NCBI GenBank assembly: GCA_047495785.1
Contig: JBLDXI010000019.1
Span: 1,612,001 to 1,676,000 of the forward strand
DNA: 64,000 bases
Direction of reading: 5' to 3'
DNA from: Lepidodermella squamata
Taxonomy: Eukaryota > Animalia > Gastrotricha
In this document: positions 31,650 through 51,479 of the stretch, one piece after another
Layout of the letters: every line of letters starts with the position of its first letter
Position numbering within the stretch: position 1 is the stretch's first letter
The notes under the pieces: generated by a model
The model's input: only the letters and a program-made list of their open reading frames with translations
Told to the model about the DNA's origin: nothing
The model's database searches: none
Position numbers and translations under genes: made by a program

Positions 31650-32784
31650 AATCAGTTTTTAACTCGTCGATTTATTTAATATAGAAAAGTTGCCTATGAC
31701 ATCTGCAAATAACCAGGTATTTTATATAACTTGAAGGCCCATTGATGGTTAGTGAAAGGTGGTCATTTATCGCGATCAAAGGTAGTCTTTTTACCTAACC
31801 CTGGCACGGCGCGTAAAAAATATATTCATTGATTTATTTTTGTCGCTTTTTATTATTTCGCGGCGCTTGATCAAAGGCGGCGCCGGATGTGTTCAACTTC
31901 TTCAGCTCTATGCGCCGAGTATAAAAAGTGTTATGAAGAATAAAAAAGGCGTCTTTGATTTACCAACATTGCGATCCTTAGTGCTAATAATGTTTCTTAG
32001 CAGGTAAAAGCGGAAATCGACTTCTTAACCACAGTCTGGGAGGATATAATTTCAATATCGAAAAATCGACCATTAGCAATCAAATAGTGGGAATTGTGAA
32101 AGTTGTAGCTGGTGTGCATGGAACATTGATTAATAAAAAAATGATTATAAATAAAATTGAATTTTTGCTAGGTAGCCGTAATGCATAAGCCTCATCGTAA
32201 TCCTCAATTATCTCGCTATTGTAGAAATTAGCTGCCGTTCAGTCGTGATCAGTGCTTGAAATAAAACGGATAAACATAGGTGCTACAATGGATTTGAGGT
32301 TGCTTCCGAATTTTGCGATGAATTTTCCCAAGTGGCAGACAATGATAATTTTGATCATATTGGCTTCCGATTGACTGCTTATATCGGAAAAATCATTGAT
32401 TTGGACAATCGATACTGAATATCGGCTCTCATTCCTCAAAATAATTCTGAAACTGACAGCTGATAGCTCAAAAAAATGTACTTATTATTCGTCTCTAATG
32501 AGTAAGAGTTCTCGAAAAACCTGTTTTCTCGCAAGTAACAAAAGTTGGAACCTTATATTTAGGTTGGCACTAGGCGATTATAATACTCAAAATTGAGGAA
32601 AAATTGGAAAAATCTCCGAAATACTCAAATTTCCCCATATTAATTCAATCGCGTAATGAGCCTAAATTTTTGTTTGCCATCGATAGTCGATCGCGTGTGG
32701 TCCAGACTGGGAAATGCCAAGGCCTTAGAACTATGAATGGCCGCTGTCAAATTAAAAATTCAAGCTCCAATAATGGTTGTATCG

Positions 32785-35700
32785 ATGAGTTTCAAATCTA
32801 TACTCTCGATATTTCTCCTGCTAGCTACTGATTTAGCGACCGGTATCGAAGACCATCATGAAGTTGCCTTTGACATCCACAACCTGTACACTGAAACTTC
32901 AAATCCATGCCTGTCGTGCATGGGCCGGCGAAATCACAAAGATCTATACGCTGATCCGGAAGATTGCCACGCCTACTACCACTGTTTATTCTTCAACTCG
33001 ACATCGGCAAGTGGCGTGAAACGGCGATGCCCAAGCGGCACATTCTGGCACGAAGAAATCCTACAATGCGCCCCGGAATCCGCTGAGACACCCTGCCAAG
33101 ATCGATGCCGCGATCACGTAATTGCCCAACTCGGCTGTTACTCGAACAACGATTCATGCTCAAGATTTTTTGTATGTTCAAACGGCATTTCTTACCAAAT
33201 GTGCTGCCCTGAAACTACGCGGTTCAACGCGTCGACTTGTCAATGCGATTCAGACCCGATTTGTCGCGACATTTGTCAACCGGTTGACACACCTGTCACG
33301 TCAACTGCAGCTCCGATTTCGAGCAATTCAACTTTTTGCGAGGATTCTTACGGGAATCTATTGAAAGCTGTACCGGATAAAGAAGCTGCTTTCATGGTTT
33401 TCGACCTGGCCTCGGGTGGGTCTTATGAGCTCGACTGTGCGCCAGGGACATTTTTTGACCTAATAACGTGCCGCTGTAATAATTTCATAGCCGATTACGC
33501 GACTGATTTATCGCCGCAAGATCGCCAGTGCTCGCTGTATCTGCCGTTCGATCAAAACACTGAAGATCAATCTATCCATCGATTTCAGGTCGATAGTTAC
33601 GGCTATACGGCTGTTAGTTATCACAACTACGCCAGGGGGAAAGGTTCGCTTTTTGTCGACGAAGGCTGGCTCGAGATTCCTGGGTTGAAAACGCTTGATT
33701 TCGGCAAATCAGCTAGTTGGTGCTTTTTCTACCGCTGCAACGAAGGCGTCGACCCGTTGGACCCGGCCAAGTGTTCGCGTTTCGCTGGAATTTTGAGCAA
33801 TAATAAAGACTTTCACAGCTCAGAATTTACGGTTGTTGTCGCAACGGCACCGGCGTCGAAGCTTGTGGCGACGTTGAAATTTCAAAATCAGCCGAAGAAT
33901 GAGACCAGTGTGGTGGCTAATGTTACTTCGCCAAGTGAACCGGAACAGTTCAATCAAGTTTGCGTGGTTTACGACGGAGTTGTTATCAATCTCTACTTGA
34001 ATAGTGTTCGTAAAAATGTATTAAAAAAATTAAAATTTAAGGCGGATTTTTCGCTTTGCCGCAGCAATAAGAGTAACTTGGACCAAACCATAATTTTCGA
34101 AAGTCGGACAAGGTGCATTCCACATATCCCTACATTTTTAGAGGATTTTTTTATATTATTTATTTCAAATTTTAAATAATGACTTTTGACCTTGATTTTT
34201 GAGGCTCATTTGCATATGCACGGCATTTTGGGGTCGAGACTCATCCGTAAAATTTCCATGAATATTCCATGTTTCCAACCTTGAAAAGCAATCAAATTTA
34301 AAGCATAAAGAGTCCAATGTTACCTTATCTAAAAATAGCCTACATTTCGGTATTAAATTCTTCAAATTATTCCAAGCCAATTATATTCTTTATTTCAATT
34401 AATTTATATTCCATTTAATTTTTTTTAATTTCAGGCTCTAGTGTCTTCGACTCCGACTTCAAACGGGTCTTTGAATATTGGCCACTGCCCTTACGCAATC
34501 GGCCTGGACCAATCGTACGGCACTTTTCAGGGTTTCATTGACGAAGTACTGATATGCCCTCAGGCTTTGACGAAAGAAGAGGTTCAGGCTCATTGGCAGG
34601 GCCGCGGTGCTATGTTTGCAGCCGGGTTAATCCCAGCCCCACCTCGATCGAGTTTGATGCTTTCCAGCCCTGGTAGCTACGTCGATGAAGCCTGGGCGAA
34701 ATTCAAAGCAGATTATGCGAGAAATTACGCCAACCCTGAGCAAGAAGACGAACATAAAGCTCTATTCATTAAACGGTTTAAAATGATAACAGAACACAAT
34801 TTACGGTTCAAACAAGGCCTGGAGCAGTATGAAATGAAAATTCACGAATCAATGGACCTGCCGTGGTCGAAGGTGGCGGCTGGGAAACTCGGCTTTGCCG
34901 CGGCTTCGGCGAAAAATCTGGCGAACGTCGGTAATAAGCCTAAAAAAGCTGTCGATGTTAATGGCAAATCGCTGCCGGCTAAAATTGATTGGCGCGAAAA
35001 GGGCTGTGTTAATGAGGTCAGAATGCAGGGTGAGTGCGGGGCGTGTTACAGCTTTGCGGCTACGTCAGCCATTGAAGGGCAATATTGCGCGAAATTTGGC
35101 AAACCTTTGAAGCCGTTATCGTCACAGCAACTTGTCGACTGCAGTCATGCGGAAGGAAACGCCGGGTTAGTCAAATTTTAATTAAATTATTTTAATTGAT
35201 TAATTTAATTTTTGACTATTTTATTCTATTTTTTTATTTCTGCTTACTTTTTTTTATTTAATTAAATCAATTTAAATTAATACTAATTTAACTAATTTTT
35301 CACTAATTTTAATCAATTTATTTTAATTTTTTCTAACCTCAGATGTTTGGGTGGCTTAATGGTTCAATCTTATGAGTACTACATGAGTAACAAGCGATTT
35401 CATTTCTGGGAAGAGTACCCTTACGTCGGATTCGGCGACGGGCAGTGCAAGGTGACTAATATGTTGACCAGCGTGCAAGTGCCGCTATCTATCGCCAGCT
35501 ACGTCACTGTTCCAGCTCAAGAAACCGAACTTCAAAAAGCAATCGCCCTCTACGGAACCGTAGCTTGTGCTGTTGATGTTAACGAGGCGTTTTTAGCGTA
35601 TTCCGGTGGGCTGTTTTACAGTCCGACTTGTACTAGCCAGGTGAATCATGCGATTGCAATTGTCGGATATGGCTGCACAAGAGGAAACAAAAATACGGTA

Positions 35701-36086
35701 TGATAAAATTAGTTAAAATTAAGGGTTTAATTATTTTTCAATTTTCCAGTGCTTTGGATCAAAATATTGGGTGAGTGATTGAAGCGATTAATATTCTTCG
35801 AAAATTTGGATTTTCCTTAAAGATCCTTCGGAACAGCTGGGGAGCTGTCTGGGGTGAAAATGGTGAGTTGGCTTCTTTCCAACTATTTTCTCATTTAATT
35901 TGATTAATTTTAAGGTTACATGAGAATTGCGAGAAATGTCAAAAGAACTTGTGGCGTTGAAACACTTTGCAGGTATAACCATTTATTAGCCGATTTCAAT
36001 GTCAAATCAGGTCAATTTTTTTCATCAGCTACGTTGTTATTGGCGACCCACAACCAACACAGGAAAACGTTAAACTTGAGGCCTGA
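32785..36086 (+). CDS. CBM14-LamG-I29-C1A fusion protease, copy A
   Basis: Approximate exons 32785-34005, 34435-35165, 35343-35697, 35750-35770, 35823-35862, 35914-35972, 36030-36086, all GT-AG and in frame. QGECGACYSF, NHA, RNSWG. Start could also be 32737 or 32773. Confidence 0.85.
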
Positions 36087-36272
36087 CACGCGCCGCATGA
36101 CCTATTTATTTTCAAATGATTTATTATTATTGTAATAAAATTACTGGGAGAAGCAGATTTATTTCGCCCGCTATTACCGCGTGTTGTGAAGACTTCAATT
36201 GTAAGACGTGCTCGTGTTACCGCGAAAATTTGTCGAATTGAAAACTTGAACCAGGCCAGCATTATTTCAGTT

Positions 36273-36299
36273 TCGCGTGCGAGGGAATTTTATCACGTG
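36273..36299. promoter_or_regulatory. Paired E-box-like motif (TCRCGTG x2) upstream of copy B
   Basis: tcgcgtg at 36273 and tcacgtg at 36293; equivalent pairs lie upstream of copies C and D. Confidence 0.4.
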
Positions 36300-36441
36300 T
36301 GCCTGGCTGCGGAATGACACGAGTCTGCGACACGAAATAATCTCCTGCGGTATCGTTATTTTACAAATTAAAGCTGCTATCGTAAACAGTTTCATTCTTA
36401 ATTTTGCTTGCAATGTTTTTTTACCTATAAGACAAAGCCGA

Positions 36442-39400
36442 ATGATGAAATTTATTTTAGCCTTTGTCTTCGTCCTTGCGACAAATGTTTCATTTTGCGT
36501 CGCCGATGGAGAGGATCGTTATGTAGAGGTGGTATTAAGCGACGCTCAACAATTTTGCCAACAAGCTTGCAAAAATCGCCAGAACCCGAAGGATGCCTAC
36601 GCCAGCCCGAATGACTGTCACAAATACTTCCAATGCCTGTTCGTGAATGAGACCTACATCATTGGCATCGAACGTGACTGCCCGAAAGGTCAATTCTGGC
36701 GCGATGAGATCATGCAGTGCGCACCCGAGGGCGAGACACCCTGCCAGGACCAGTGCCGCGACCCGGTGACAGCAGAACACGGCTGCTACGCCCACTCGTT
36801 CTCGTGCTCGACCTACTTTGTCTGCTCGAATGGCATCAGCCATCAGATGTGCTGCCCCGAGACGACCCGATTCAACGCGAACACGTGCCAGTGCGACTAC
36901 GACCCTGACAACGTGTGCCGCGAGCCGTGTCTGAGACCCCCTGCCAATCCGCCTCAGATCGGCAATCAGACCGTGGCGAGCAACGGCACGTACTGCACAG
37001 ACGGCTACGGCAACATCCTCCGCCCATCTCCGACCAGCAATTCGAGCTTTATCGTCGTCGATGTTCAAAGCGAGCCGGTAAATGGGTCGTTCCAGACCTA
37101 CGAACAGCCATGCGCCCCTGGGACACTTTTCGACCTGGAAGGATGCGCTTGCAATAGATTGGACGAAGCCTTCGACTACTCTCGTCAACCTAATCGGCAT
37201 CAATGCAAATTATTCATGCCATTTGATGTGGACAACAAGGACCACTCTGCCTATAAATGGGAGGTTCTCGACTATGGCTACACAATTTTGAGCCAACACT
37301 TCAAAGCTCATGGTCGCAGTTCGCTTTTCATTGACGGCGGCCGTCTTGAACTTCCTGGCTTGAAGACTTTGGACCTCGGAACTGAGGCTAGCTGGTGCTT
37401 TTTCTTCCGTTGCTACGACGGCATCGATCAGCAACAACCAGCTCGTTGTACCATGTACTCAGGTCTTCTCGGAAACAATAACGATGTCTTGGGCTCGGAA
37501 TTCACCGTCAACATCGCTTCGGCCCCGACCTTTGTTGTCGGAAATGTTCGGTTCAAGAATTTCCCTGGCGTTGATGTCACCGTCCAAGCTCCTCATGTCA
37601 TCGATACAACGGATGAAGACGCTTTCACTCATGTCTGTGTTGTCTACGATGGCTTCGACGTAAAACTCTACATCGACAACGTAAGAATTCCAAGCTTAAA
37701 TTATTTTAATGAAGAAAATAATATTAAATAATTATAATTTTATTTATTTTTTCGAGTTATTTCAAAATTTATATGAATAATTATTAATGATTATAATAAT
37801 TAATTAATATTATTATTAATTTAATTAATTAATTAATCTTTTTATATTCTCCAATTAATTTTTAATTTGTTTGATTTGAAAGAAATTGGTTTCAACGGCG
37901 CCTGTTCCAGCTAACCAGACACAGCTTCAAACTGCCCATTGTCCGTACACCATTGGTACCGATCACATGTATGGCGATTTCCAAGGCTTTATCGACGATG
38001 TCCTAATCTGCGACAAAGCTTTGACGCCCGAGGAGGTCGACGCCCATTACCAGGGCCAGGCGGCTCTTTTCGCAGCTGGATTGGTACCCGCACCACCTCT
38101 TGCCACTTCTTTCAACTTGGAACCACCAAACGTATGATTTTTCATTTTGGAATATTTCATTCAATTTTTTTCAATTCGGAGCAGTGCGCCGATCGGTGGA
38201 AGCAATACAAACACGACTGTAAGGTGTCGTTCAAGGAAAGGGCGAAGGAAGATGACGCTTACCGCCTGTTCAAGAAACGATACTCGAGCATTTTTGATCA
38301 CAACAAGCGATTCCTGATGGGCGAAGAATCCTACGAAATGGCCGTCGTCTGCGGTCTGCACCTCGATTACAAGGAATGGGTCGATGGCAAGTTCGGCTAC
38401 GATGGTAGCAAGGTGGCCGGCGTGCAGCGTACCATCGACGATGGCGAGGAGGAGGAGAGCAGTGAAGAGACAGAAATTCCGGAATTCTTCGACTTCCGCG
38501 AAACTAACTGCTTGCAACCGATCCGCGAGCAGGGCTCTTGTGGCGCCTGTTTCGCATTCTCAACTGTCGGTAAGACCGAAATTTCTTGTCTAACTTCTAA
38601 AACAAAACAGGCTATTCCAGCCAGCCAGAAATTACCGGATTTACCAGCCAGCGATAAACCGTTCTGCCAGAAAAATTGCTAAATTGTCATACTTTTTGCG
38701 CGAGTTAAGGCTCGTGAGTCCAACGTAGCTTCTTTTAGAGTTTTATGCAAGTAAGCAAAATTAAATCAATCAGCTTGAACGAAATTTTTTATTTTATCAA
38801 TAATTGCATATTTTGAAGGAAAAATTGGCGACCATATAGGTATCACTTTCTGCTACGGCAATTGCGGCCATTACTTATGCGATTGCAATTTTTTTCATGT
38901 TTTTCGAGCAGGCTTAAAATAAGATATTGTTCTAATAAAAATGATAAAATTTTACGCAAAAAAGGAAACAATTTTTCTTAATTTTTTCTGCAAATTTTGA
39001 GAGACCGTTAAAAGTGAAAATTGGGGTTTGGCGAAAGTTTTGACATCGTGACATTTCGATTCCGCTTTCGAGATCAAGGAGCGAGAAGTCGAACGGTATC
39101 AAAAATAGGTTGATAGTAAAAAGGTTTTCAAAATTGGGATTCAAAGTTAACGGGTGTAAATTGCGAATTTCGAAAAACACGCACTTATAAAATCCAATTT
39201 TTTTTATTATTTTGCGTAAATTAATTATTTAAATTCTGATTTCTGTAGTTTCACTCTAAAAATTGCAACTAGTAATGCGTTGACAGTCGAACCATTACAT
39301 TTCTGCAAATTTTTTATGCGCAGCCGAAATTGTTTGGGTACCCTGAGGTGAGGAATCTAGCTAAATATTCAACATTTTTGATTAAATCAAGCTAATGCTT

Positions 39401-40461
39401 CCTCGTCCACTCCTTTGACTTTCCCGTCTTTCGAGGTGGATGGGGGCCTCTTAAAGGTCTGAATTTTGAAAATTCTAAATCCTTTAGAACCCCTTGGAAT
39501 CCAAGAATCACCCACTACGATTGCTACGATTTCACATAATTCTACAAATTCTAACTTGATTAACAGCCACCATTGAGGGCAACTACTGCAAGCAATACCT
39601 CAAGCGATGCGAACCGCTGTCGCCGCAACCCCTTGTCGATTGCACGGCGAGCGGCAAGTACGACAACGCCGGCTGCAATGGCGGGCTCATGGTCGTTTCC
39701 TACAAGTTTCTAATGGAACGCCGAAAACTGTTCCCGCTCGCCAAGGTTCCTTACAAGATGAAGCAGGACACGTGCAGCTATCTAGACGATCCATTCCTTG
39801 CACCTGTGCCGTTTCACGTTGTTCACTACGTCACAATTCCGTTCAATTCAGAGGAAGGCTTGGCGAAGGTATATATATTCAAGTTTTATCGACTACGGTT
39901 GTTTTTAATAACAAAAATTGTAGGGTATCGTAAGAGCCGGCATTGTCTCGTGTGCCATCGACGCGACTCGTAACTACCTAACGTACTCCGGCGGTATTTT
40001 CTGTGACACAACTTGCTCTGATGTTATGCCTAATCACGCGATCAACTGTAAGATAATATTATAATTTTCGTACATTTACCTTTTTTACATCACAATTTTC
40101 AGTCGTCGGATTCGGTTGCACGAAGCCCGGCCGATCCTGCAAGGTGATTTCTAGACCACGCTCTATTTAGTAATTTCAATTATTCTTAATGTTTTTTTCA
40201 AGTTCGGATGTTGTGGATACCGTTATTGGATCATGCGCAACAGGTAGTATCTCAAAATATTGAAAAATAATAATTACTATTTTTATTGTGTTTTTAAGCT
40301 GGGGCGTTCGTTGGGGCGAAAAAGGTGAATTGATGCTCAATTTATTTGCTGGATTTAAATTCGTCAAATTTCAACTTTTTTTAGGTTATATGAGAATTCT
40401 TCGAGGTGGCATGCGAAGCTGCGCTATCTACGTTCTATGCAGCTACGTCATTGTCGGATGA
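36442..40461 (+). CDS. CBM14-LamG-I29-C1A fusion protease, copy B
   Basis: Signal MMKFILAFVFVLA; 9 exons splice in frame; QGSCGACFAF, NHAIN|FVGFG, MRNS|WG; stop at 40461. Confidence 0.85.
39000..39385 (+). repeat. Dispersed repeat family, copy c (in an intron of copy B)
   Basis: Similar to 22555-22880 and to the reverse complement of 16270-16990. Confidence 0.7.
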
Positions 40462-41354
40462 GCCCATCAGCCACAGACAACTTACAATTTTGAAAAATTT
40501 GAATGAATTATCGAATAATCTCTTCTATATGATAGTAATATTATACGTATTACGTTATTTAAATTGCAACAGAAGATGTTCAATAAAACGCAGCTATACA
40601 TTATATGTGTGTTCAATGCTAATTTCTAAAGCTTATTCATGTGCCTATGCGGGCATTTTTGGCAGAAAAATCGCAGAATGACCATAAGCTTCAGCTCAAT
40701 AATTGGAAAAAGTTTATAATATCACGTTGAGGTGGAATACAGTAAATCATTATTTCTATTTAAACCAGTTCTCTTTAAACCAGAAAAAGTCGAAGTTTCA
40801 AGTGCACTCTAAGGCAAAAACGAAGAAAATTTAACCCCGATCTGCTTTTCGATAATCAAGTATTTAAAAAATTGTATATTTTTTATTCTCACGGATTTTC
40901 TTCTAAAGCAGTCAGTTGAAAATTTTCGACAAAATAGCAATTGTTTCCGCCTCTTCTGAAGCCGACTAATCGAAAATCAGCTCGGAAACCAACTAAGGAT
41001 GTTTTGAATAACACCGTATTTTTTCCTATAGGGCTACTTTTGGAAAAAAAATCGGTATTTTGATCCAACCTTTTGATCCAAGCCGCCGAATCAGCAGACC
41101 GTTTCGCGCCCAGGGCGTCACACCCCGTGTCACGTGAGTAGTGAAGTTCCTTTAGCTTGGAGCTCTTCTAAAATTAGCTTGTTATTGATCAACTCGGGGT
41201 TAGATGCTGGGGTTGGTTCCCGCGACTGGATTAATTGTCTTTTGGCCTCAAAATTAGACGCATGACCCAACACGCGCGAGGCAGTCCTTTCAAATGTAAA
41301 CAAGTGACCAAGGGAAGTTGTTACGAATAGACAGGAAAATGAAACTTTGCCATC

Positions 41355-41383
41355 TCACGTGAGGGAAATTTTAGTCTCACGTG
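41355..41383. promoter_or_regulatory. Paired E-boxes upstream of copy C
   Basis: tcacgtga at 41355 and tcacgtg at 41377; a further gtcacgtga at ~41129. Confidence 0.45.
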
Positions 41384-41453
41384 CGATCCGCGGACAAATC
41401 TGTAAAATGCTCTAAAGCTTCAACAATTATTTCAAAATTTCATTCGATAAACT

Positions 41454-44400
41454 ATGATAATTTTGCTTGGATTTATTTCGACAGCAATAATATGCGCTGT
41501 CAAAGCTCATGAACATGACGATTTTTCGTCGTACGTCGCCCCGGAGATAAGCGACGCTCTGGCCTTCTGCCAACAAGCGTGTAACGGCCGGAGTAACACG
41601 CGAGATGCCTACGCTGATCCTGAGAACTGCCACAAATACTTCCAGTGCCTCTTCGTGAATGAGACCTACATCATTGGCATCGAACGCGACTGCCCGAAGG
41701 GTCAATTCTGGCGTGATGAGATCATGCAGTGCGCACCCGAGGGCGAGACACCCTGCCAGGACCAGTGCCGCGACCCGGTCACGGCCGAACATGGCTGCTA
41801 CGCCCACTCGTTCTCGTGCTCGACCTACTATGTCTGCTCGAATGGCATCAGCCATCAGATGTGCTGCCCTGAGACGACTCGATTCAACGCGAACACGTGC
41901 CAGTGCGACTACGACCCTGACAACGTGTGCCGCGAGCCGTGTCTGAGACCCCCTGCCAACCCGCCTCAGATCGGCAATCAGACCGTGGCGAGCAACGGCA
42001 CGTACTGCACGGACGATTACGGCAACATCCTCCGCCCATCTCCGACCAGCAATGCGAGCTTCATCGTCGTCGATGTTCAAAGTGAGCCGGTCAATGGGTC
42101 GTTCCAGACCTACGAACAGCCATGCGCCCCGGGGACCCTCTTCGACCTGGAGGCCTGCCGTTGCGATAGTCATGACGAGAATTACGATCACGGGAGCCAA
42201 CCCAAGACGCCCCATTGCAAATTATTCATGCCGTTTGAGGTTGACTCGAAGGACCACTCTGCCTATAAATGGGAGGTTCTCGACTATGGATACACCATTT
42301 TGAGTCAACATTTCAAGGCAAGGGGAGTGAGTTCGCTGTTCATCGACGGTGGCCGCCTCGAAATTCCTGGCTTGAAGACTTTGGACCTCGGAACTGAGGC
42401 TAGCTGGTGCTTCTTCTTCCGCTGCTACGACGGCATTGACCAGAAAGAACCAGCTCGTTGTACGATGTATTCCGGTCTCCTGGGCAACAATAACGATGCG
42501 CTGGGTTCTCAATTTACTGTTAACATTGCATCTGCTCCAACCTATGTAGTTGGAACTGTTCGGTTCCAGAATTTCCCGGGCGAAGATTTCACAGTTTCTG
42601 CGCCTCATGTCATCAACACTAAAGATGAAGATGCCTTTACCCATGTCTGCGTTGTCTACGACGGTTTGGAAGTGAAGCTCTACATCGACAATGTGAGTTA
42701 TTTAAAGGAAAATTAAAAGAATTTAATTCAATTTTAAAATAAAAAATCGGACATAGTTATTCATAGTTATCAACATTTGGTTAATTTCAAATAAATTTCA
42801 AAATTTCAAATTAAACTTTTTTAATTTAAAAAACACTTTGTCGAGTTTTGACAATTTGCAAAAATTAGAAATTGATGTCAACCGTCGCAGCCCCAGCTAA
42901 CCAGACGCAGCTTCAAACTGCCCACTGTCCGTACACGATTGGTACCGATCACATGTATGGCGATTTCCAAGGCTTCATCGACGATGTTCTAATCTGCGAC
43001 AAAGCTTTGACGCCCGAGGAGGTCGACGCCCATTACCAGGGCCAAGCGGCTCTTTTCGCGGCTGGGCTGGTACCGGCACCACCCCTTGCCTCTTCTGTCA
43101 ACTTGGAACCGCCTAATGTAGGTTTAATAGCCATAAAAATTGAACTTTTTGTAATATTGTCTCCAAACTTAAGGCTGCCGAGCGGTGGAAGCAGTACAAA
43201 TATGATTGTAAAATCACTTTCAAGGATAAATTGAAAGAATCTGACGCTTACATGCTGTTCAAAAAGCGTTACTCGAGCATTTACGAGCACAACAAGCGAT
43301 ACCTTCTCGGCGAGGAGACGTACGAAATGGCCGTTATGTGCGGTTCCCATCTCGAATGGAAAGAACTCGTCAGCGGCAAATTCGGCTATGACGGCACCAA
43401 AGTCGCCGGGGTTCAACGTAGCATCGGCGGCGAAGAAGTTGACAACACCACCGAGGAGCAGGTTGTTATACCTGACAGCTTTGATCTTCGAGCGAAAAAC
43501 TGCTTGCATCCCATCCGCGATCAAGGCTCGTGTGGGGCCTGTTTCGCATTCTCCACAATAGGTAATTCGACTTCAATTTGGAAATAATGCTAATGGCAGT
43601 CAATAAATCCATGGGAAAACTCGGCTTCAATAAAATTTTGCGACCTTTTTTAGAAAAATTGATGAGGCAAATTTAGCAAATTTAATTTAATTTAATATAA
43701 TTTGTAATTAATGAATTAAGTAAATAATTTTGAGGAGTTGTCAATTTTCAGATTTAAAAATTTCAATTTTTCAAATTTTTCGTTTTTTTAATTCCAAGTA
43801 TTTTAGTTTTGATTATTTAATTTTCGAAATTTCCATGTTAATTTTTTTAATTTTTTTTAATTTTGAAATTTAAAGTCTCGATTGAAGGCGCGTATTGTCA
43901 TCAGTACAAAGAGCGGCCGCAGCCGTTGTCGCCGCAAGTTCTCGTCGATTGCACCGTCGACACCCGGTACAACAACGCCGGATGTGATGGCGGTCTTATG
44001 GTCAATTCTTACAAGTTTTTCATCGACAACGAAAAATACCTGCCCCTCAGCTTGGTACCGTACAAAAACAAGCAGGAAAAGTGCAGCTACTTGAGCGGGC
44101 CGAACGTGACCATTGTCCCGGTTAAAATCGTTTCGTTCGTTATTGTCCCTCTCGGGTCAGAGGACGCGCTAATTAAGGTTTGAATTCGCGTGATTTTTCG
44201 ATTTTTTTCATCCAAATTTTGGGTTATTTTCAGGGCATTATCAAGGCTGGTATCGTGTCTTGCGCAATCGATGCGACGCGCAATTATTTGATGTATCAAG
44301 GCGGAATTTTCGCGGATACGACCTGCTCGGATGTGACGCCGAACCACGCCATAAATTGTAAGAAAATATAATTAAAAAAGAAGGATTAATTGAATGAAGA

Positions 44401-44892
44401 AGAAAAATCTAGATTTTTTGAATGCACTTTTTCCGAACTCTCACTTATGGTTACAATTTTTGTCGATTTCTCAATTTGCCTATACAAAGTAGAACCGAAT
44501 ATTTCCTTGAATATTCTATGAAATGTCCATTATTTTGCAGTCGTTGGATATGGATGCACCAAGCCATGCGCCACAGGCAAGGTGAGCTATTGTTTCCGTT
44601 GAAAAAATTGATGATTTGACATATCCCGAAAATAGTACAAATGCTGCGGTGTCCCGTTTTTAATCATGCGAAACAGGTATTTCACATTTTTTTGAGATTC
44701 ATTTAGCGAAGGTCATATCTGAGTTTTCTTTCAGCTGGGGAACCAGATGGGGCGAGAAAGGTAATTAAATGCGCCTTTTTCGGATTCAAAAACTGAGTTT
44801 TGTCATTAAAACTAGGTTATATGCGGATATTACGAGGAGCGAAGAGAACCTGTGGAATCTACGTGCTCTGCAGCTACGTCATCGTTGCTTGA
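41454..44892 (+). CDS. CBM14-LamG-I29-C1A fusion protease, copy C
   Basis: Signal MIILLGFISTAIICAVKA; same 9-exon structure as B; QGSCGACFAF, NHA, RNSWG; stop at 44892. Confidence 0.85.
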
Positions 44893-45302
44893 AAAGACTC
44901 ATTTCTCATTATTAATTCCTATTTTTCACTAATTGAATTATCGAGTTGAAATGTACTCAATCAAATGACCTATAATTGACTAATGAAATAATGGAAAATC
45001 GTATTTTTTCGGTCAACCTCGCCATGCATCATGAACGATTTTACCTAATAAAATAAGATGAATAAGTGATTAATAAAATATATTAATTTTCTTGATTTTT
45101 TTCAGTATGCAGTGTTGACTATCTGTTGAGATGAACTGGGAGATTTTTTGAATTGAGATGCCGATGGTATTAAAATGATTCTGACCCGAGCCTAAGGAGT
45201 GAAGCCGCTGGTAATCATAATTATTATCGTATTTATCATCAAGTGAAGGCCGCCTTCGAAAAACGCTGCATACCCTCAGAGGTTGACCCAGTAATTAAAT
45301 CA

Positions 45303-45946
45303 CCCATATCGGCACCGATTAGTCGAACCTAGTCGAACCTGTTTTAGCTTAGTCGAACTTAGTCGAACCCGGCCGAAGGTTTTTTAGCTTGGTCGAACCT
45401 AGCCGAACCTGTTTTGGCCTGTTTGAACCTTTTGGCACCGGTTAGTCGAACCTAGTCGAACGTCTTGAGATATGGTCAAACATTTCCGGGCGTGGACGAA
45501 CTTGGCCGAACAATTTTTGACATATAAAATTGCCATCCGAATCGTTGGCCGAACCTAGCCGAACAATTTGTTCGACATAGTTCGGTCAGGATTTAAAAGC
45601 ATTGACGTTGTAAAACAAAATCCTAAAAATGTGTTGCACGAACTTGGCCGAACATTTCTGAGGACTCCGATATGAGGAATTAGTTCACAAACCAACTCGG
45701 ATTTTTTTGGTTTTTTTTTTATTTTTTTGTTCTCAGGTGGTACTATATCATATGTCCCAGGGTGGCTGCAGGTAGGCATCCCACCTGGTTTACCTGTGCT
45801 TTTCTAGGATAGGTAGTACGCAATTCTGGCCGAACCTGGTCGAACAAGTGTAGGCCGAACCTGGTCGAACAAATGTTTCATTTTATCGTCTTAGTTCGGC
45901 CAAAATTTAGTTCGGCTTAGTTCGACTAAACCGGTGCCGATATGGG
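45303..45946. mobile_element. Non-autonomous CACTA/EnSpm-like element (CCC...GGG ends, 2-bp TSD, subterminal 10-bp repeats)
   Basis: TIRs cccatatcggcaccg / cggtgccgatatggg; CA on both flanks; many (a/g)g(t/c)cgaac(c/t)t units inside. Confidence 0.8.
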
Positions 45947-46297
45947 CAGCACTAGCCACGAGTCAAGGAGCGTGTAAATGGCAGACTGGCACGTGGTGAT
46001 AAGAATACTTGTATGACCCAGTAAAATAAAAGCTGGGCGAAAATCACAAGTCCTTAATAGTAGACGTGAACTTAGTGTATACTGGATACTGTAAAATTTG
46101 GCATACCCAATTTTGATCAATCTGAACTCAGCCCGATTGAATCATAGAATTCCGCGCTGAATTCCGCGTGTTGGAAGACAATTGATTTGCTCTAGAGTGC
46201 CGCGCTCGCGAAGCTAGGTCAATTACCTAAAAATTTGAATCACCTGATGTTAAAACTTAGAACGTAGGAAAAGTGAAAAACAAACACATTCCTGAAA

Positions 46298-46325
46298 TCA
46301 CGTGCCCTCCTATGGTCTCACGCGA
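46298..46325. promoter_or_regulatory. Paired E-box-like motif upstream of copy D
   Basis: tcacgtg at 46298 and tcacgcga at 46318. Confidence 0.4.
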
Positions 46326-46434
46326 TTCTGTTTTACCCCCAGGCACGAGCCGATCGACCTCACACTCATTCAGAAAAATTTAAATCGTATTTTGAATTTT
46401 ACCAAGGTAAAATTTGTAATATCTATTTTTAGCA

Positions 46435-49400
46435 ATGCTGTATTACGCAAAGCTGCTGATTTTATCTTTTTCGATTTCGTTATCAAATGTGAGTGGCGAC
46501 GAATTCGCTTTCCATGCTCCCGAGGTTAGCGACGCTCAAACGTTTTGCCAGCAAGCCTGTCAAGGTCGCCACAACCCGAAAGACGCTTATGCCAGCCCTA
46601 CCGACTGCCATAAATATTTCCAGTGCCTATTCGTGAATGAGACCTACATCATTGGCATCGAACGAGACTGCCCGAAGGGTCAATTCTGGCGGGATGAAAT
46701 CATGCAGTGCGCTCCCGAGGGCGAGACACCCTGCCAGGACCAGTGCCGCGACCCAGTCACGGCCGAACACGGCTGCTACGCCCACTCGTTCTCCTGCTCG
46801 ACCTACTTTGTCTGTTCTAACGGAATCAGCCATCAAATGTGCTGCCCTGAGACGACCCGATTCAACGCGAACACGTGCCAATGCGACTACGACCCTGACA
46901 ACGTGTGCCGCGAGCCGTGTCTGAGACCCCCGGCCAATCCGCCTCAGATCGGCAACCAGACCGTGGCGAGCAACGGCACGTACTGCACGGACGACTACGG
47001 CAACATCCTCCGCCCATCTCCGACCAGCAATTCGAGCTTCATCGTCGTCGATGTTCAAAGCGAGCCGGTGAATGGGTCGTTCCAGACCTACGAACAGCCA
47101 TGTGCCCCGGGGACCAACTTTGACCTAGAGACATGCCGATGCAATAAATTCATCGAAGATTTCCCAACCCAGCCAAACAGCCGTCAATGCAAGTTGTTCA
47201 TGCCGTTTGAAAGTGATTCGAAAGATTATTCCGTTAACAAATTCGAAGTTCTCAACTATGGCTACACTGTTATCAGTAAGCACTTCAAAGCTCACGGCCG
47301 TAGTTCCCTTTTCGTCGACGGCGGTCACCTCGAAATTCCCGGTTTGAAGACTCTGGACCTCGGAACTGAGGCGAGTTGGTGCTTCTTCTTCCGTTGCTAC
47401 GACGGCGTCGACCAGAAAAATCCAGCTCGTTGCACCATGTTTTCAGGCCTTCTCGGCAATAACCGCGATTTCATGAGTTCGGAATTTACAGTCAACATTG
47501 CATCGGCCAAAGATTCGATAGTTGGCGCTGTTCGTTTTCAGAACTTCCCGGGAACTGATTTTACTGTTAGCGCACCGCACGAAGTTGATACGACAGATGA
47601 AGACGCTTTCACGCATGTCTGCGTTGTCTACAATGGATTCGATGTGAAGCTGTATTTGAATAATGTTAGTAAAAAAATCCCATTTTTTATTATTTTATTA
47701 TTTATGTAAACCATCATAGAGAACGTAGTGATCACTACGTTCTCTATGATGTAAACATGTAATATAAAAATTAATTCCTCATTGAAATTCAAATTTTTTT
47801 TTCCAATTTAAAATTGTTTTAAAATTCATAATCATTTTCCCGTCGTCAAAATTTATTTTATTTTGAAAATTTAGGATATATTTTTCGAAGTTTAAAATTT
47901 TTGAAAATTTGAAAATTTCAAATGATTTTTCCTAAATTTTCAGACTTTGGTTTCAACAGTCGACGCCCCGGCTAATCGGACCAAGCTTCAGAACGCACAT
48001 TGTCCTTACACAATCGGAACCGATCAAAGCTACGGCGACTTCCAAGGCTTCATCGACGATGTCCTTATCTGCGACAAAGCTTTGACGCCCGAGGAAGTTA
48101 ACGCTCATTATGAGGGCCAAGCCGCCATGTTCGCTGCCGGCCTCGTCCCGGTTCCACCTCTGGCAACCTCACTTGATCTGGACCCGCCTAACGTGAGTTC
48201 AATCGTGCTTTCTCTAGGCTCAGGCTATTTTAGATTGAATTACATTTTTTGAATTTCATCTTCGAATTTGTGCTCATGCAAAGATCCCAGCTGAAGATGA
48301 ATAAATATCGATTTATTTATTTGATTTTCGATTTTGAAGGCTCTTGATATGTGGCTAAGCTATCGACAAGAATTTCACGTTAAATTCAAAACTACTGCCG
48401 ACGAACAAGCCGGCTTTGAGCTTTTCAAGAAGCGCTACTCGGCGATTTATGAACACAACAAGCGGTACCACATCGGCGAGGAAACGTACGAAATGGGCTG
48501 TTACGATGGCATGCACAAGCCGTGGAAGGATGTGGCAGCCGGCCTGCTCGGCTACAACGGCGCTTCGATCGACGAGGAAAAGCTGCAGCGAAGCAATGGC
48601 GACGGCAGTGGTAGTCAAGAGGAAGCCGCTCCTCCGCTTCCGGATGAGCATGATTTCAGGCGCACCGGCTGCGTTCATCCGATTCGCGAGCAAGGCACAT
48701 GTGGAGCTTGTTTCGCTTTCGCAACTGTCGGTGAGAAAAAATTGACAACATACCTATATAATATAAATTATCGGATAAATCTTATTCTTAAGGTATGTAT
48801 TGTACCATAATCCCATAATGTAAAGTTTGCTACATTCACTCAACATTTGCGACGCTCACTCAGATTTTTGCTACGCTCACCATTTAACTCATAAATAGGC
48901 ATATATAGGTATTTAGTATTTTTGGGTAGACACAGCTGAAATATAGGCTTTCAGCACTGAACTGGCACTGAACTGGAAAAAATTGTAAGCCTGTTGTGAA
49001 ACAAAATTTCGAAACTTTCTCGAAGTTCGAACTTCCGAATCGTAATTGCTTTTTAGAAAATGGCTACAACGTGTTCTGAAAATGAGGACCAGGCCTTATA
49101 AATTACCGTATTTTACGAATTATAAGACCCTGCCCTGTATTTTTTTCAAACGAGGTTCAAGTCCTGCCCTGTATTTAGGGTCTGCCCTTTATTTCGGCTC
49201 TGCCCTTTATTTTTTCGAACCTAATCAGTCACCTGAAGAGTACCTAGATCAACAGTTTATTCCACCGAATAACCACTATAGCTACTGCCTTCCACCTGTG
49301 GCTACACGCGTAAAGTGTTTGCTCAAGAGGATTAATGTGGATAAAGGGCGATTTGTGCACTTAATGACGAAAAATCTCAACCTATCCAACTCTAACCACT

Positions 49401-50941
49401 CACCCAGCAGGCGCTCATGTAAGCCACTTCATACAAGACCCTGCCTATTAATACGGTTCTGCCCTTTATTGTTTCAAATGACCATTACCCTCTGCCCTTT
49501 ATTCCGGTTCTGCCCTATAATTGGGTCCTGCCTAATAATTCGTAAAATACGGTATACAGGAAATTACGGGGAATCTCAACGTATTTTACTTGGATTCATT
49601 TTTTAATTATTTCTAAAATTCCAGAAAATTCAGAAAAATAGATTTAGGCGAATTAATTATTAAGAATTAAATAATACCACTACATAGTGGGGCAAATTTG
49701 GTTTTGCCAAAGACCATTATATTTGAGGCTTTCCAGATAGCGGAGCCGATATCGATTTCCATTATCGATTTTAACCCTGTTCATGTCAGTTTTAAGGTGA
49801 CATGACAAATAAAAATTCTTGTCAGGTTTCTGCAAATTCTTCGGTTTTGTTTTTTCATTCGAAAAACTGTTTCACTTTTCGCTTAAACCTCAAATCCGAC
49901 GTCTTCAACGACGCTAGCGCTAGGCGTCATATAAAGGCAACCTTTAAAATTGATCCACTGGCTACCAGGTTTCTAAAATGATAGGGAATCTTTATCAACC
50001 GAATTAGGAAATGTTTGATCAATCAAAATTAAATAATTTTCAGCAAGTTTTATCCTTATATTTTTTTAATTGTAGCCGGAATTGAAGGCGCATTCTGCAA
50101 GCAGACGGGCGAGCGCTTGGAGCCGTTGTCGCCGCAAGTCCTCGTCGACTGCACCGACCAGTACGACAACGCCGGTTGCGATGGCGGGCTCATGGTCAAC
50201 TCTTACAAGTTCTACAAAGACACTGGCAAATACTTCCCACTGCGCTGGCTGACGTACAGGAACCGCAAAGCTGTGTGCAACTACCTGACGAACGATTCAA
50301 TTCCTATTGTTCCCATCCAAATCGTGTCCTTCGTTATCATTCCGAGAAATTCAGAAGAAGCGCTTTTGAGGGTAATTGTTTGAGGTAAAAAATTGAAAAA
50401 ACGTGATTTTTCGGCGGTGATTTAGGCTATCATCAGAGCTGGAATTGTTTCATGTGCGATTGACGCGACGAGAAACTATTTGAGCTATCGCGGCGGAATT
50501 TTCTCGGATACAACATGCTCTGATACCACGCCAAATCACGCTATCAACTGTAAACTTATCGCTTCCTTATTTATTTTAATTTATCAATTTTCCACGCGCA
50601 GTTGTCGGCTACGGTTGCTCGAAACCTTGTACTACGGCGCGGGTAAAGCTATTAAATGATTTTATTCATTTTTTTATTTCGAGTATTGTTCAGAACCGAT
50701 GCTGTGGCAGTAATTTTTTGATCATGCGTAACAGGTATATTCGACTTTTGAAGGTTTAATTTGTGATCAATTTTTTTTATGAAGTTGGGGTACAAAGTGG
50801 GGCATCAATGGTAAGGTTTACCGTTGTTATGATTAATTATTATTCACTGAGTTATTTTTTATAGGTTACATGCAAATATTGCGAGGCGGCAAGCGAAATT
50901 GCGCAATTTACGTTTTATGCAGCTATGTCTTGGTCGCCTGA
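46435..50941 (+). CDS. CBM14-LamG-I29-C1A fusion protease, copy D
   Basis: Signal MLYYAKLLILSFSISLSNVSG; same 9-exon structure as B and C; QGTCGACFAF, NHA, RNSWG; stop at 50941; AATAAA at ~51057. Confidence 0.85.
47712..47751. repeat. 40-bp perfect palindrome associated with an 8-bp direct repeat (intron 1 of copy D)
   Basis: catcatagagaacgtagtga|tcactacgttctctatgatg; atgtaaac at 47704-47711 and 47749-47756. Confidence 0.9.
49106..49552. mobile_element. Tc1/mariner-pogo-type MITE with TA TSD (intron of copy D)
   Basis: ta|ccgtattttacgaattat ... ataattcgtaaaatacgg|ta; internal ctgccct repeats. Confidence 0.85.
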
Positions 50942-51479
50942 TAAGTTTCACCGGCCGTTTTAACCATAACAAGAAGAATTAAACTATCAATCATCATTAT
51001 TTATCATTTTTCGAAGCCGACTGCCCTTAATCGGTTTAACTTGAAACTTACACTTCAATAAACGCATTTTGCATATCAATAATATCTAATTTTAGAAAAA
51101 CTATGAGCTTTTCTTCCTGGGAAAACCCAGACACATGTGTGTTAGATAGAGGCGAAGAGCTGAGGCGGAAGGATGCTCGTATTTCAGCTAATCAACTTGG
51201 CTGCATTCGCGCTGTTATCGACGCGACTTTTTTATTTATCGCTAACTATAGATGATCATACTTGGCGTCTCTTTCGTTTCATTTTTTCATTTTCTTACTT
51301 TGATTTAGAGGTTCAAATGACTGCTGAACAAAAATAGTTTGCATTCTGACAAAGGATCGAATTTGTATGTGTTGACGGAAGTTCATCGCCCCCGGAGCAG
51401 CCGGACGTTAAATTCGAAAAGCTTTCACATCTTAAACCCCGAATACTTATCAATCGAATCATCACATTTCACGCGAAAC

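What the first reader, a model, noticed from the sequence alone, without database searches (positions are those of the whole stretch)
32785..50941. Four-gene tandem array of chitin-binding Pif-like/cathepsin-L fusion proteases (CBM14-LamG-I29-C1A)
Seen: the ORF track fragments these genes, but in all four copies GT-AG splicing gives one frame running signal peptide, two CBM14-like domains plus a partial third, a LamG domain, an I29-like propeptide and a papain-family domain. In copy A the LamG end, propeptide and protease start lie in one exon (34435-35165), so the fusion does not depend on my splice model. Gln, catalytic Cys (CGAC[F/Y]), His (NHA) and Asn (NSWG) are all retained. Known: CBM14+LamG is the core of Pif/BMSP-like extracellular matrix proteins, and cathepsin-L zymogens normally carry only I29 or cystatin extensions. 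Inference: a chitin-tethered protease zymogen system for a chitinous matrix (gut peritrophic layer, cuticle or tube) or for chitinous prey or pathogens. I do not know of a described family with this architecture.
Basis: partly seen in the sequence, partly recalled or inferred. Interest (0 to 1): 0.88.

Follow-up and report, generated by a model that had tools for sequence, protein, structure and literature searches.

The report
Chitin-binding module fused to procathepsin L
Four neighbouring, intact genes in an unidentified invertebrate each join a shell-matrix-type chitin-binding module to a complete cathepsin-L zymogen; I found no description of this protease design, which probably deposits a latent protease on chitin-containing material.

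Summary
My own spliced alignment gives four intact + strand genes (A 843, B 827, C 828, D 824 aa). Each gene encodes a signal peptide, CBM14 x2 plus a third CBM14-like unit, a LamG jelly roll, an I29 propeptide and a C1A protease with Gln/Cys/His/Asn intact.

The fusion is real:
- In copy A, the LamG end, I29 and the catalytic Cys lie in one exon.
- In copy B, an RNA-derived contig joins the LamG-end exon, the propeptide exon and the next protease exon across two modelled introns.
- An 812-aa gene with the same architecture sits on metagenome contigs of a second animal.

All domains are under purifying selection (omega 0.04-0.29 among B-D). The N-terminal module is the Pif/BMSP core. Elsewhere it occurs alone, behind VWA, or fused to trypsin-like pseudoproteases. 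No paper or database protein with CBM14+LamG+C1 turned up, though search sensitivity was limited.

Function is inferred: chitin-directed delivery of a latent cathepsin L. The anchor lies upstream of the propeptide, so activation should release the enzyme rather than leave it tethered. I rate this a new variant of known kinds, of moderate to high interest.

The parts
32737..36086 (+). Gene A, 843 aa, 7 exons: 32737-34005, 34435-35165, 35343-35697, 35750-35770, 35823-35862, 35915-35972, 36029-36086
   Evidence: Spliced model, all introns GT-AG, single terminal stop. No RNA coverage in run X1.
34435..35165 (+). Gene A exon 2: LamG C-terminal strands, about 20-aa linker, complete I29 propeptide, and the start of the C1A domain including Gln19 and Cys25, all in one uninterrupted exon
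   Evidence: Pfam on window:34435-35163 gives Laminin_G_3 at aa 5-51, Inhibitor_I29 at 87-139 (30.2 bits, above the cut-off) and Peptidase_C1 at 180-240. The best solved match is procathepsin L-like 3qj3, aligned from query residue 78 to chain residue 13.
36442..40461 (+). Gene B, 827 aa, 9 exons: 36442-37680, 37883-38131, 38185-38569, 39567-39868, 39924-40047, 40103-40143, 40203-40243, 40299-40324, 40385-40461
   Evidence: Spliced model. RNA-derived contigs of run X1 cover the exons only. They show the joint 38131->38185 and a contig running on from 38569 into the start of exon 4.
41454..44892 (+). Gene C, 828 aa, 9 exons: 41454-42692, 42869-43117, 43174-43561, 43876-44177, 44234-44357, 44541-44581, 44636-44676, 44735-44760, 44816-44892
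   Evidence: Spliced model with the same intron positions and phases as B and D. Pfam CBM_14 in 3 stretches, Laminin_G_3 end, Peptidase_C1.
46435..50941 (+). Gene D, 824 aa, 9 exons: 46435-47664, 47944-48192, 48340-48730, 50076-50371, 50426-50549, 50602-50642, 50694-50734, 50785-50810, 50865-50941
   Evidence: Spliced model. Pfam CBM_14, I29 at 23.8 bits, Peptidase_C1.
38132..38184 (+). Gene B intron 2 (53 nt, phase 0) between the LamG end ('..EPPN') and the first residues of the propeptide. Equivalent introns are 43118-43173 in C and 48193-48339 in D. Copy A has no intron here.
   Evidence: GT..AG joint seen in an X1 contig at depth 102. A profile of B-D exon 3 aligns to procathepsins from the start of their propeptides.
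36600..37250 (+). Approximate gene-conversion tract covering the CBM14-coding part of B. The equivalent parts of C and D are about 41600-42260 and 46580-47230.
   Evidence: In B/C/D the CBM14 region is 88-90% identical in nucleotides, with third codon positions 74-80% identical and dS 0.34-0.65. The protease region has third positions 45-52% identical and dS above 1.3 or saturated.

Best explanation
These are four functional paralogous genes for secreted chimeric zymogens. Each joins a Pif/BMSP-type matrix-binding module in frame to a complete procathepsin L that lacks its own signal peptide. The module consists of two peritrophin-A/CBM14 domains, a third CBM14-like unit and a LamG jelly roll.

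Shown:
- The architecture, and intact catalytic and disulphide residues.
- Purifying selection on every domain.
- Transcription and cis-splicing of copy B across the LamG/propeptide/protease junctions.
- The same architecture in a second animal.

Inferred mechanism:
- The signal peptide sends the protein out of the cell.
- The CBM14 domains dock it on chitin, and LamG may add a second matrix or glycan contact.
- The I29 propeptide keeps the C1A domain latent.
- The anchor sits upstream of the propeptide, so activation cleavage (autocatalytic at low pH, or by another protease) frees the mature cathepsin-L-type endopeptidase of roughly 220-240 residues at that site. The anchor plus propeptide stays on the matrix.

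The system therefore stores and locally releases protease on chitin-containing material. It does not permanently tether the active enzyme.

Likely origin: a stand-alone module gene that ended just after '..GLIP' lost its stop and spliced into the propeptide exon of a downstream cathepsin L gene, skipping that gene's signal-peptide exon.
For: - Gene models with all-canonical introns and single stops.
- LamG end, I29 and the C1 start lie in one exon in copy A.
- X1 contigs cover B exons only, with zero depth over B intron 1, the intergenic DNA and copy A. They carry the GT..AG joint 38131->38185. A 655-nt contig runs from 32 nt of exon 2 through exon 3 into 238 nt that read as the start of exon 4.
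- Catalytic Gln/Cys/His/Asn are present in all four copies.
- The nearest solved relatives are procathepsins L, S and K, aligned from the first propeptide residues.
- omega is 0.04-0.29 in every domain among B-D. A versus the rest has saturated dS with dN 0.3-0.6 in the CBM14 x2, LamG and C1 regions; the third CBM14 unit and the linker+I29 region reach 0.6-1.0.
- Second species: L006/L007 carry an 812-aa gene with signal peptide, CBM_14, Laminin_G_3 end, I29 and Peptidase_C1. It shares the intron after 'VNN'. Only 7 nt separate the LamG-end ORF from the propeptide ORF, so there is no room for a separate cathepsin first exon.
- Stand-alone homologues end exactly at '..GLIP', where the window proteins continue.
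- Module identity: P0001 is homologous over the whole module (E 6e-101). It passes the Laminin_G_3 cut-off and models as CBM14 units plus a jelly roll at pLDDT 88. Its best matches are Pif and shell matrix proteins.
Against: - There is no biochemical evidence for chitin binding, protease activity or the activation site.
- The B exon 1-exon 2 junction was not seen in RNA. That stretch was skipped as a repeat.
- Copy A had no RNA coverage in the only RNA-like run. C and D lay outside the stretch that was laid on reads, so they were not examined.
- The active-site motif is CGAC[F/Y] rather than the usual CGSCW.
- I29 is below Pfam's cut-off in B and C.
- Some C1A enzymes keep N-terminal parts associated after processing, so release on activation is not certain.
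- The organism, the expressing tissue and the presence of a chitinous structure are unknown.
Confidence: 0.6

Rival explanations
1. Polyprotein for co-secretion only. The fusion is a precursor cut soon after synthesis into an ordinary Pif-like matrix protein and an ordinary procathepsin L. These then act independently. The link ensures joint expression and export, not targeting.
For: - Pif itself is made as a precursor containing Pif97 and Pif80 (PMC11291548).
- The module exists as a stand-alone protein in relatives, ending at the very point where the fusion continues.
- The procathepsin part has no signal peptide of its own and would need the module's.
Against: - No dibasic or furin-type site is visible in the 15-25 residue linker of A-D by inspection (alignment).
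- The linker is short.
- The same module is also fused to catalytically dead trypsin-like domains, which fits targeting better than mere co-secretion.
Confidence: 0.12
2. The target is foreign chitin, not the animal's own matrix. The proteins are digestive or defensive enzymes that dock on chitinous prey, fungi or parasites, or on a gut peritrophic layer, and release cathepsin L there.
For: - The array is tandemly expanded, with divergent protease domains (63-68% aa identity among B-D, about 45% to A) behind a homogenised chitin-binding part (92-96%). A constant anchor with diversifying catalytic ends is typical of digestive and immune gene families (my own knowledge).
- Chitin-binding modular serine proteases of insects (Sp22D, Tequila) are linked to immunity (PMC1761132).
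Against: - The module's nearest relatives by sequence and fold are structural matrix proteins (Pif/BMSP, VWA-module proteins).
- There are no expression or localisation data.
- This shares the molecular mechanism of the best explanation and differs only in the biological target.
Confidence: 0.2
3. Two separate genes at each position (a module gene and a cathepsin gene), wrongly merged by the gene model.
For: - In B-D a short intron lies exactly at the module/propeptide border.
- In copy B, intron retention would end the module protein after '..PPNV' (ORF 37886-38137).
- An earlier unchecked scan note (s1-392005) raised trans-splicing for a similar cathepsin elsewhere in this genome.
Against: - Copy A has the border inside one exon.
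- The RNA-derived contig joins the two sides in B.
- No copy has a cathepsin signal-peptide exon. Only 50-147 nt (window) or 51 nt (L006) separate the two parts.
- Frame and phase are conserved in five genes of two species.
Confidence: 0.04
4. Non-catalytic matrix proteins. The C1A domain has become a binding or structural module (a pseudoprotease), like the dead trypsin-like domains fused to the same module in other animals.
For: - The module-trypsin fusions in L002 and L005 have lost the catalytic Ser, and L002 has also lost His.
- The window proteins have an atypical CGAC[F/Y] motif, and B-D carry an extra Cys-rich insertion before the NSWG motif.
- Unchecked scan notes report cathepsin pseudoproteases elsewhere in this genome (s1-387861).
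Against: - Gln19, Cys25, His159, Asn175 and the flanking Trp/Gly residues are retained in all four copies and in L006, despite saturated synonymous divergence between A and B-D.
Confidence: 0.04

Closest known systems
Cathepsin L-type zymogens (MEROPS family C1A with I29 propeptide)
   Same: Complete I29 propeptide followed by a papain-fold domain with Gln19, Cys25, His159, Asn175 and NSWG. The best solved matches are procathepsin L-like enzymes of Tenebrio and Fasciola and human procathepsins L, S and K, aligned from the first propeptide residues.
   Different: No signal peptide of its own. It is preceded by a module of about 480 residues (CBM14 x2-3 plus LamG). The active-site motif is CGAC[F/Y] instead of CGSCW. 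B-D have an extra Cys-rich insertion before NSWG.
Pif / BMSP shell matrix proteins and related ChtBD2-LamG matrix proteins (molluscs, tubeworm tube)
   Same: The CBM14 repeats followed by a LamG jelly roll form one unit. The fold model of the homologue P0001 matches Pinctada Pif, a Mytilus shell matrix protein and 'Matrix protein-1' best. VWA+module relatives were also found (P0004, P0008, P0011). The domain set is described in PMC11291548 and PMC8476170.
   Different: No VWA domain and no acidic or basic low-complexity Pif80-like region. In every Pif-type match the module is C-terminal, whereas here a protease zymogen follows it.
Modular chitin-binding serine proteases of insects (Anopheles Sp22D, Drosophila Tequila)
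   Same: Secreted proteases whose N-terminal part carries peritrophin-type chitin-binding domains. Sp22D binds chitin (PMC1761132). This is the closest functional analogue for how the proteins may work.
   Different: The catalytic class differs (S1 serine protease versus C1A cysteine protease), as do the accessory domains (SRCR, LDLa versus LamG). They are unrelated in descent.
CBM14-LamG module fused to trypsin-like pseudoproteases (metagenome loci L002/L005, found here)
   Same: A homologous N-terminal module with the same intron after 'LYxN(G/N)', and a protease-fold domain attached right after '..GM(I/V)P'.
   Different: The C-terminal domain is trypsin-like, with the catalytic Ser replaced (GDGGTP, GADAGTP). 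It has no propeptide-type inhibitor domain.
C1A enzymes with other extensions (cathepsin F with a cystatin-like N-terminal part; Sarcophaga 26/29-kDa protease; plant RD21-type enzymes with a C-terminal granulin domain). This entry rests on my own knowledge and was not checked here.
   Same: They show that the papain fold tolerates large added domains and that extensions can direct or regulate the zymogen.
   Different: None of these extensions is a carbohydrate- or chitin-binding or LamG module.

Membership tests
Peptidase family C1A (papain/cathepsin L-like) | Significant match to the Peptidase_C1 profile above the curated cut-off | tested here: met
   28.6-72 bits per exon piece against a cut-off of 20.7, in all four copies.
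Peptidase family C1A (papain/cathepsin L-like) | Catalytic Cys25/His159 dyad with Gln19 and Asn175 | tested here: met
   All four residues are present in A-D in the QGxCGAC, NHAI and NSWG motifs. They are also present in L006.
Peptidase family C1A (papain/cathepsin L-like) | Cathepsin L-type I29 propeptide directly upstream of the mature domain | tested here: met
   Pfam I29 scores 30.2 bits in A (cut-off 24.4), 23.8 in D and 13.5 in C, with no hit in B. A profile of B-D exon 3 aligns to procathepsins L, K and S from propeptide residues 3-19 onward, E 6.5e-11.
Peptidase family C1A (papain/cathepsin L-like) | Thiol-dependent, E-64-sensitive endopeptidase activity | not testable with these tools
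   Needs expression and an enzyme assay.
Pif/BMSP shell matrix proteins | VWA domain N-terminal to the chitin-binding domains | tested here: not met
   No VWA hit in any exon 1. The signal peptide is followed directly by CBM14.
Pif/BMSP shell matrix proteins | CBM14 (peritrophin-A) domains followed by a LamG domain | tested here: met
   CBM_14 at E 1e-12 to 9e-15. The homologue P0001 (E 6e-101 to the exon 1 profile) has Laminin_G_3 at 44 bits. Its model shows a jelly roll at residues 204-416 and matches Pif best.
Pif/BMSP shell matrix proteins | Presence in a biomineral or chitinous matrix | not testable with these tools
   Needs proteomics or localisation.
Laminin_G_3 / ConA-like jelly roll | Pfam match above the cut-off in the window's own proteins | tested here: inconclusive
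   Intron 1 splits the domain in all copies, and the pieces could only be submitted separately. They score 12.9-17.5 bits (profile positions 55-102) and 16.5-22 bits (104-151) against a cut-off of 27.6. For A the two adjacent pieces sum to about 34 bits, which would pass. Contiguous homologues do pass.
CBM14 / peritrophin-A chitin-binding domain | Six-cysteine pattern with conserved aromatic residues; binding to chitin | tested here: inconclusive
   The profile match and invariant Cys/aromatic columns are present. Chitin binding itself is not testable here.
Modular chitin-binding serine proteases (Sp22D/Tequila type) | S1 (trypsin-fold) catalytic domain | tested here: not met
   The catalytic domain is Peptidase_C1. 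This is a functional analogy only.

The most novel reading that the evidence does not exclude
The CBM14-LamG unit is a mobile 'chitin address tag' that animals have attached repeatedly to protease-fold domains of different classes (cathepsin L here and in L006; trypsin-like domains in L002/L005). This would define an unrecognised family of matrix-addressed zymogens. The anchor-propeptide part stays on chitin and the active enzyme is launched locally, giving a programmed-release system for moulting, hatching, or remodelling or attacking chitinous matrices. The homogenised anchor and divergent protease ends in the four-gene array would then be a substrate-diversified set sharing one address.
Probability: 0.3. 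Interest if true: 0.75.

Novelty: new variant of a known kind. Interest (0 to 1): 0.58.

Why it matters
Papain-family proteases are among the best-studied enzymes, yet large N-terminal targeting modules on them are rare. I found no description of a chitin-binding/LamG module on one.

If the inferred mechanism holds, the proteins show a simple way to place a latent cysteine protease on a chitin scaffold and release it on activation. That bears on how animals remodel or dissolve chitin-protein composites such as cuticle, eggshell, jaws, tubes and gut linings.

The proteins also link the Pif/BMSP biomineralisation toolkit to proteolysis. They are a clean natural example of gene fusion by loss of a stop codon and exon skipping. 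The design is directly testable, and it resembles engineered chitin-binding protease fusions already being tried in biocontrol (bioRxiv 10.64898/2026.07.24.740453, listed; only its abstract was seen).

Tried and rejected
1. The search for homologous proteins with the B exon 1 ORF, with the junction region of A exon 2 and with a 22-sequence module alignment gave nothing, or only P0013 and two relatives. The word index misses relatives below about 50% identity: it missed P0001, which the exhaustive profile search found at E 6e-101. These blanks therefore say little.
2. A scan of JGI metagenome contigs with the LamG-end alignment failed at first because no stretch was conserved enough. With a narrower alignment it returned 23 loci. 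All match only the LamG C-terminal half and have no CBM14 or C1 match. They look like unrelated, probably bacterial, LamG proteins.
3. An ESM Atlas search with A exon 2 gave only low-scoring LamG or pentraxin clusters.
4. Rfam on the whole window gave no hits.
5. The module tree puts the five C1 fusions on one side of a branch, but with weak support (70/40). Single versus repeated origin of the fusion is left open.
6. A contig of run X2 appears to join copy A intron 1 to a copy C-like exon (loose end at 34431). Both introns end in the same AT-rich low-complexity run, so I treat this as an assembly-graph artefact or another paralogue. It is not evidence about the gene models.
No model of a whole zymogen was made.
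8. The organism could not be identified with these tools.


Full report
**Observation**

ORF listing shows long open frames with CBM14-like and papain-like content recurring four times on the + strand between 32.7 and 51 kb. I wrote a splice-aware protein-to-DNA aligner with GT-AG introns of any phase. I built copy A by hand and used it to model B, C and D.

All four models are single open frames with only canonical introns:
- A: 843 aa, 7 exons.
- B: 827 aa, 9 exons.
- C: 828 aa, 9 exons.
- D: 824 aa, 9 exons.

The coordinates are given in the parts list. Most introns are 50-60 nt. B, C and D share every intron position and phase. Compared with B-D, A lacks three of these introns and has one of its own inside the protease domain. 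tblastn with copy A finds no further copy in the window.

**Domains**

- Pfam finds CBM_14 (two to three stretches) in every first exon, and Peptidase_C1 in every copy.
- Inhibitor_I29 is above the cut-off in A, borderline in D, and weak or absent in C and B.
- A profile of B-D exon 3 aligns to solved procathepsins L, K and S from the first residues of their propeptides. A exon 2 does the same. The propeptide is therefore complete in all copies, and the fusion point is exactly where a normal cathepsin's signal peptide would end.
- Laminin_G_3 is split by intron 1 in all copies, so each piece scores below the cut-off on its own.
- Contiguous homologues pass the Laminin_G_3 cut-off. An AlphaFold model of the closest one, P0001 (pLDDT 88), has a jelly roll at residues 204-416. 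It matches LamG/ConA-like folds. Over the third CBM14-like unit plus LamG it matches mollusc Pif and shell matrix proteins best.
- The catalytic Gln, Cys, His and Asn are present in all copies.
- Each N-terminus has a hydrophobic signal-peptide-like stretch. This was judged by a hydropathy calculation and by eye only.

**Is the fusion real?**

Three independent lines say yes.

1. In copy A the LamG end, linker, I29 and the first 60 residues of the protease, including the catalytic Cys, lie in one uninterrupted exon.

2. The older public run X1 is labelled as probably RNA. It covers only exons of copy B: depth is zero over B intron 1, the A-B intergenic DNA and all of copy A. It contains a GT..AG joint 38131->38185. 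One 655-nt contig consists of the last 32 nt of the LamG-end exon, the whole propeptide exon, and 238 nt that read as the start of exon 4 at 39567. This confirms introns 2 and 3 of B and moves the start of exon 3 to 38185. The exon 1-exon 2 joint of B was not seen, because that stretch was skipped as repetitive. C and D were outside the 6-kb stretch allowed.

3. A second animal has the same gene. On ENA metagenome contigs (L006, L007) a signal peptide/CBM14 ORF, a LamG-end ORF, an I29/Peptidase_C1 ORF and a Peptidase_C1 ORF follow one another on one strand. My aligner joins them into an 812-aa protein with canonical QGKCGSC, NHAM and KNSWG motifs. It shares the window's intron after 'VNN'. Only 7 nt lie between the LamG-end ORF and the propeptide ORF.

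**Selection and array evolution**

Among B-D, omega is 0.04-0.29 in every domain. A versus the others has saturated synonymous sites, with dN 0.3-0.6 in the CBM14 x2, LamG and C1 regions and 0.6-1.0 in the third CBM14 unit and the linker+I29 region. All four are therefore maintained genes.

The 5' half of B-D is much more alike than the protease half. CBM14 nucleotide identity is 88-90%, third positions are 74-80% identical and dS is 0.34-0.65. In the protease half third positions are 45-52% identical and dS is above 1.3. This indicates gene conversion of the anchor while the protease ends diverge.

**Relatives of the module**

An exhaustive profile search of exon 1 against 1.84 billion representative proteins gave 500 hits. 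Full-length module hits fall into three classes:
- Stand-alone proteins that stop right after '..GLIP', the point where the window proteins continue (P0001, P0003, P0007, and P0009 in L003).
- VWA+module proteins, which is the Pif/BMSP arrangement (P0004, P0008, P0011).
- Module fused to a trypsin-like domain whose catalytic Ser is replaced. P0013 in L002 is one ORF from the signal peptide into the trypsin domain. P0005 and the following ORF in L005 are the other example. L002 and L005 come from the same organism and form a tandem pair.

None of the 150 best hits has a C1 domain. However, genomic hits are exon-sized ORFs, so this undercounts fusions. L006 itself was found only by looking at neighbours. 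In AlphaFold cluster representatives the module is always at the C-terminal end. A module tree groups the five C1 fusions only weakly.

**Mechanism**

Shown: a secreted-type precursor in the order anchor, propeptide, protease.

Inferred: the CBM14 domains bind chitin and I29 keeps the enzyme latent. Because the propeptide lies between anchor and enzyme, the normal activation cut would release the mature enzyme from the anchor. I therefore read this as a chitin-addressed zymogen depot rather than a permanently tethered enzyme.

The fusion most simply arose when a stand-alone module gene lost its stop and spliced into the propeptide exon of a downstream cathepsin gene. The phase-0 intron at the border in B-D and L006, and the absence of any cathepsin signal-peptide exon, fit this origin.

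Whether the chitin belongs to the animal (cuticle, eggshell, jaws, gut lining) or to prey or pathogens cannot be decided here.

**Comparison with known systems and novelty**

The protease half is an ordinary cathepsin L-type zymogen by every sequence test. The anchor half is the Pif/BMSP core without VWA, so it is not a Pif family member in the strict sense. The nearest functional analogues are insect chitin-binding serine proteases (Sp22D, Tequila; PMC1761132).

Full-text searches for combinations of cathepsin L, chitin-binding, laminin G, CBM_14, Peptidase_C1, ChtBD2 and Pept_C1 found no paper describing this architecture. I rate it a new variant of known kinds.

Caveats: an InterPro-style architecture query could not be run, the word-indexed protein search was insensitive here, and the organism is unknown.

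Earlier unchecked notes of this scan mention a 'cathepsin with no first exon' next to a chitin-binding gene about 107 kb beyond this window, and Pif/BMSP-like genes elsewhere in the genome. The family is probably larger than four.

Noticed in passing
L002:7905-10345 and L005:693-3123: In another metagenome-derived animal the same CBM14-LamG module is fused to trypsin-like domains with the catalytic Ser replaced (GDGGTP in L005, GADAGTP in L002; L002 also lacks the His). The two genes form a tandem pair. The second gene of L002 is identical to the L005 gene.
   Followed up: partly
L003:175-1738 and L006:6457-9183 (same contig, opposite orientations): A stand-alone module gene (P0009, stop right after '..AGLIP') and the module-cathepsin fusion gene lie about 9 kb apart in convergent orientation in the second species.
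   Followed up: partly
window 36535-37203 (-), 41427-42215 (-), 46627-47058 (-): Long antisense ORFs (143-262 aa) run across the CBM14-coding part of copies B, C and D. This is probably a by-product of the codon composition of the conserved, gene-converted tract.
   Followed up: no
window 34244-34421: The DNA-like run X2 carries an allele lacking 176 nt inside copy A intron 1. X2 also shows many 90-99% identical variant contigs at roughly half depth, suggesting high heterozygosity or near-identical paralogues.
   Followed up: no
window 51339-53873 (+): An intronless 844-aa ORF with an ANF_receptor ligand-binding region (E 1.4e-8) and hydrophobic C-terminal segments lies about 400 nt downstream of copy D. 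It looks like a class C receptor-like gene.
   Followed up: partly
window 36086-36442: Only 356 nt separate the stop of copy A from the start codon of copy B. RNA contigs of B begin at 36405, 37 nt upstream of its ATG, while A is silent in the same run. The two neighbours are therefore regulated separately despite the tiny spacer.
   Followed up: no
window 40103-40243, 44541-44676, 50602-50734: Copies B-D carry an extra Cys-rich insertion (such as GCTKPGRSCKFGCCGY) in the loop before the NSWG motif. It is encoded by two 41-nt exons and is absent from copy A and from L006.
   Followed up: no
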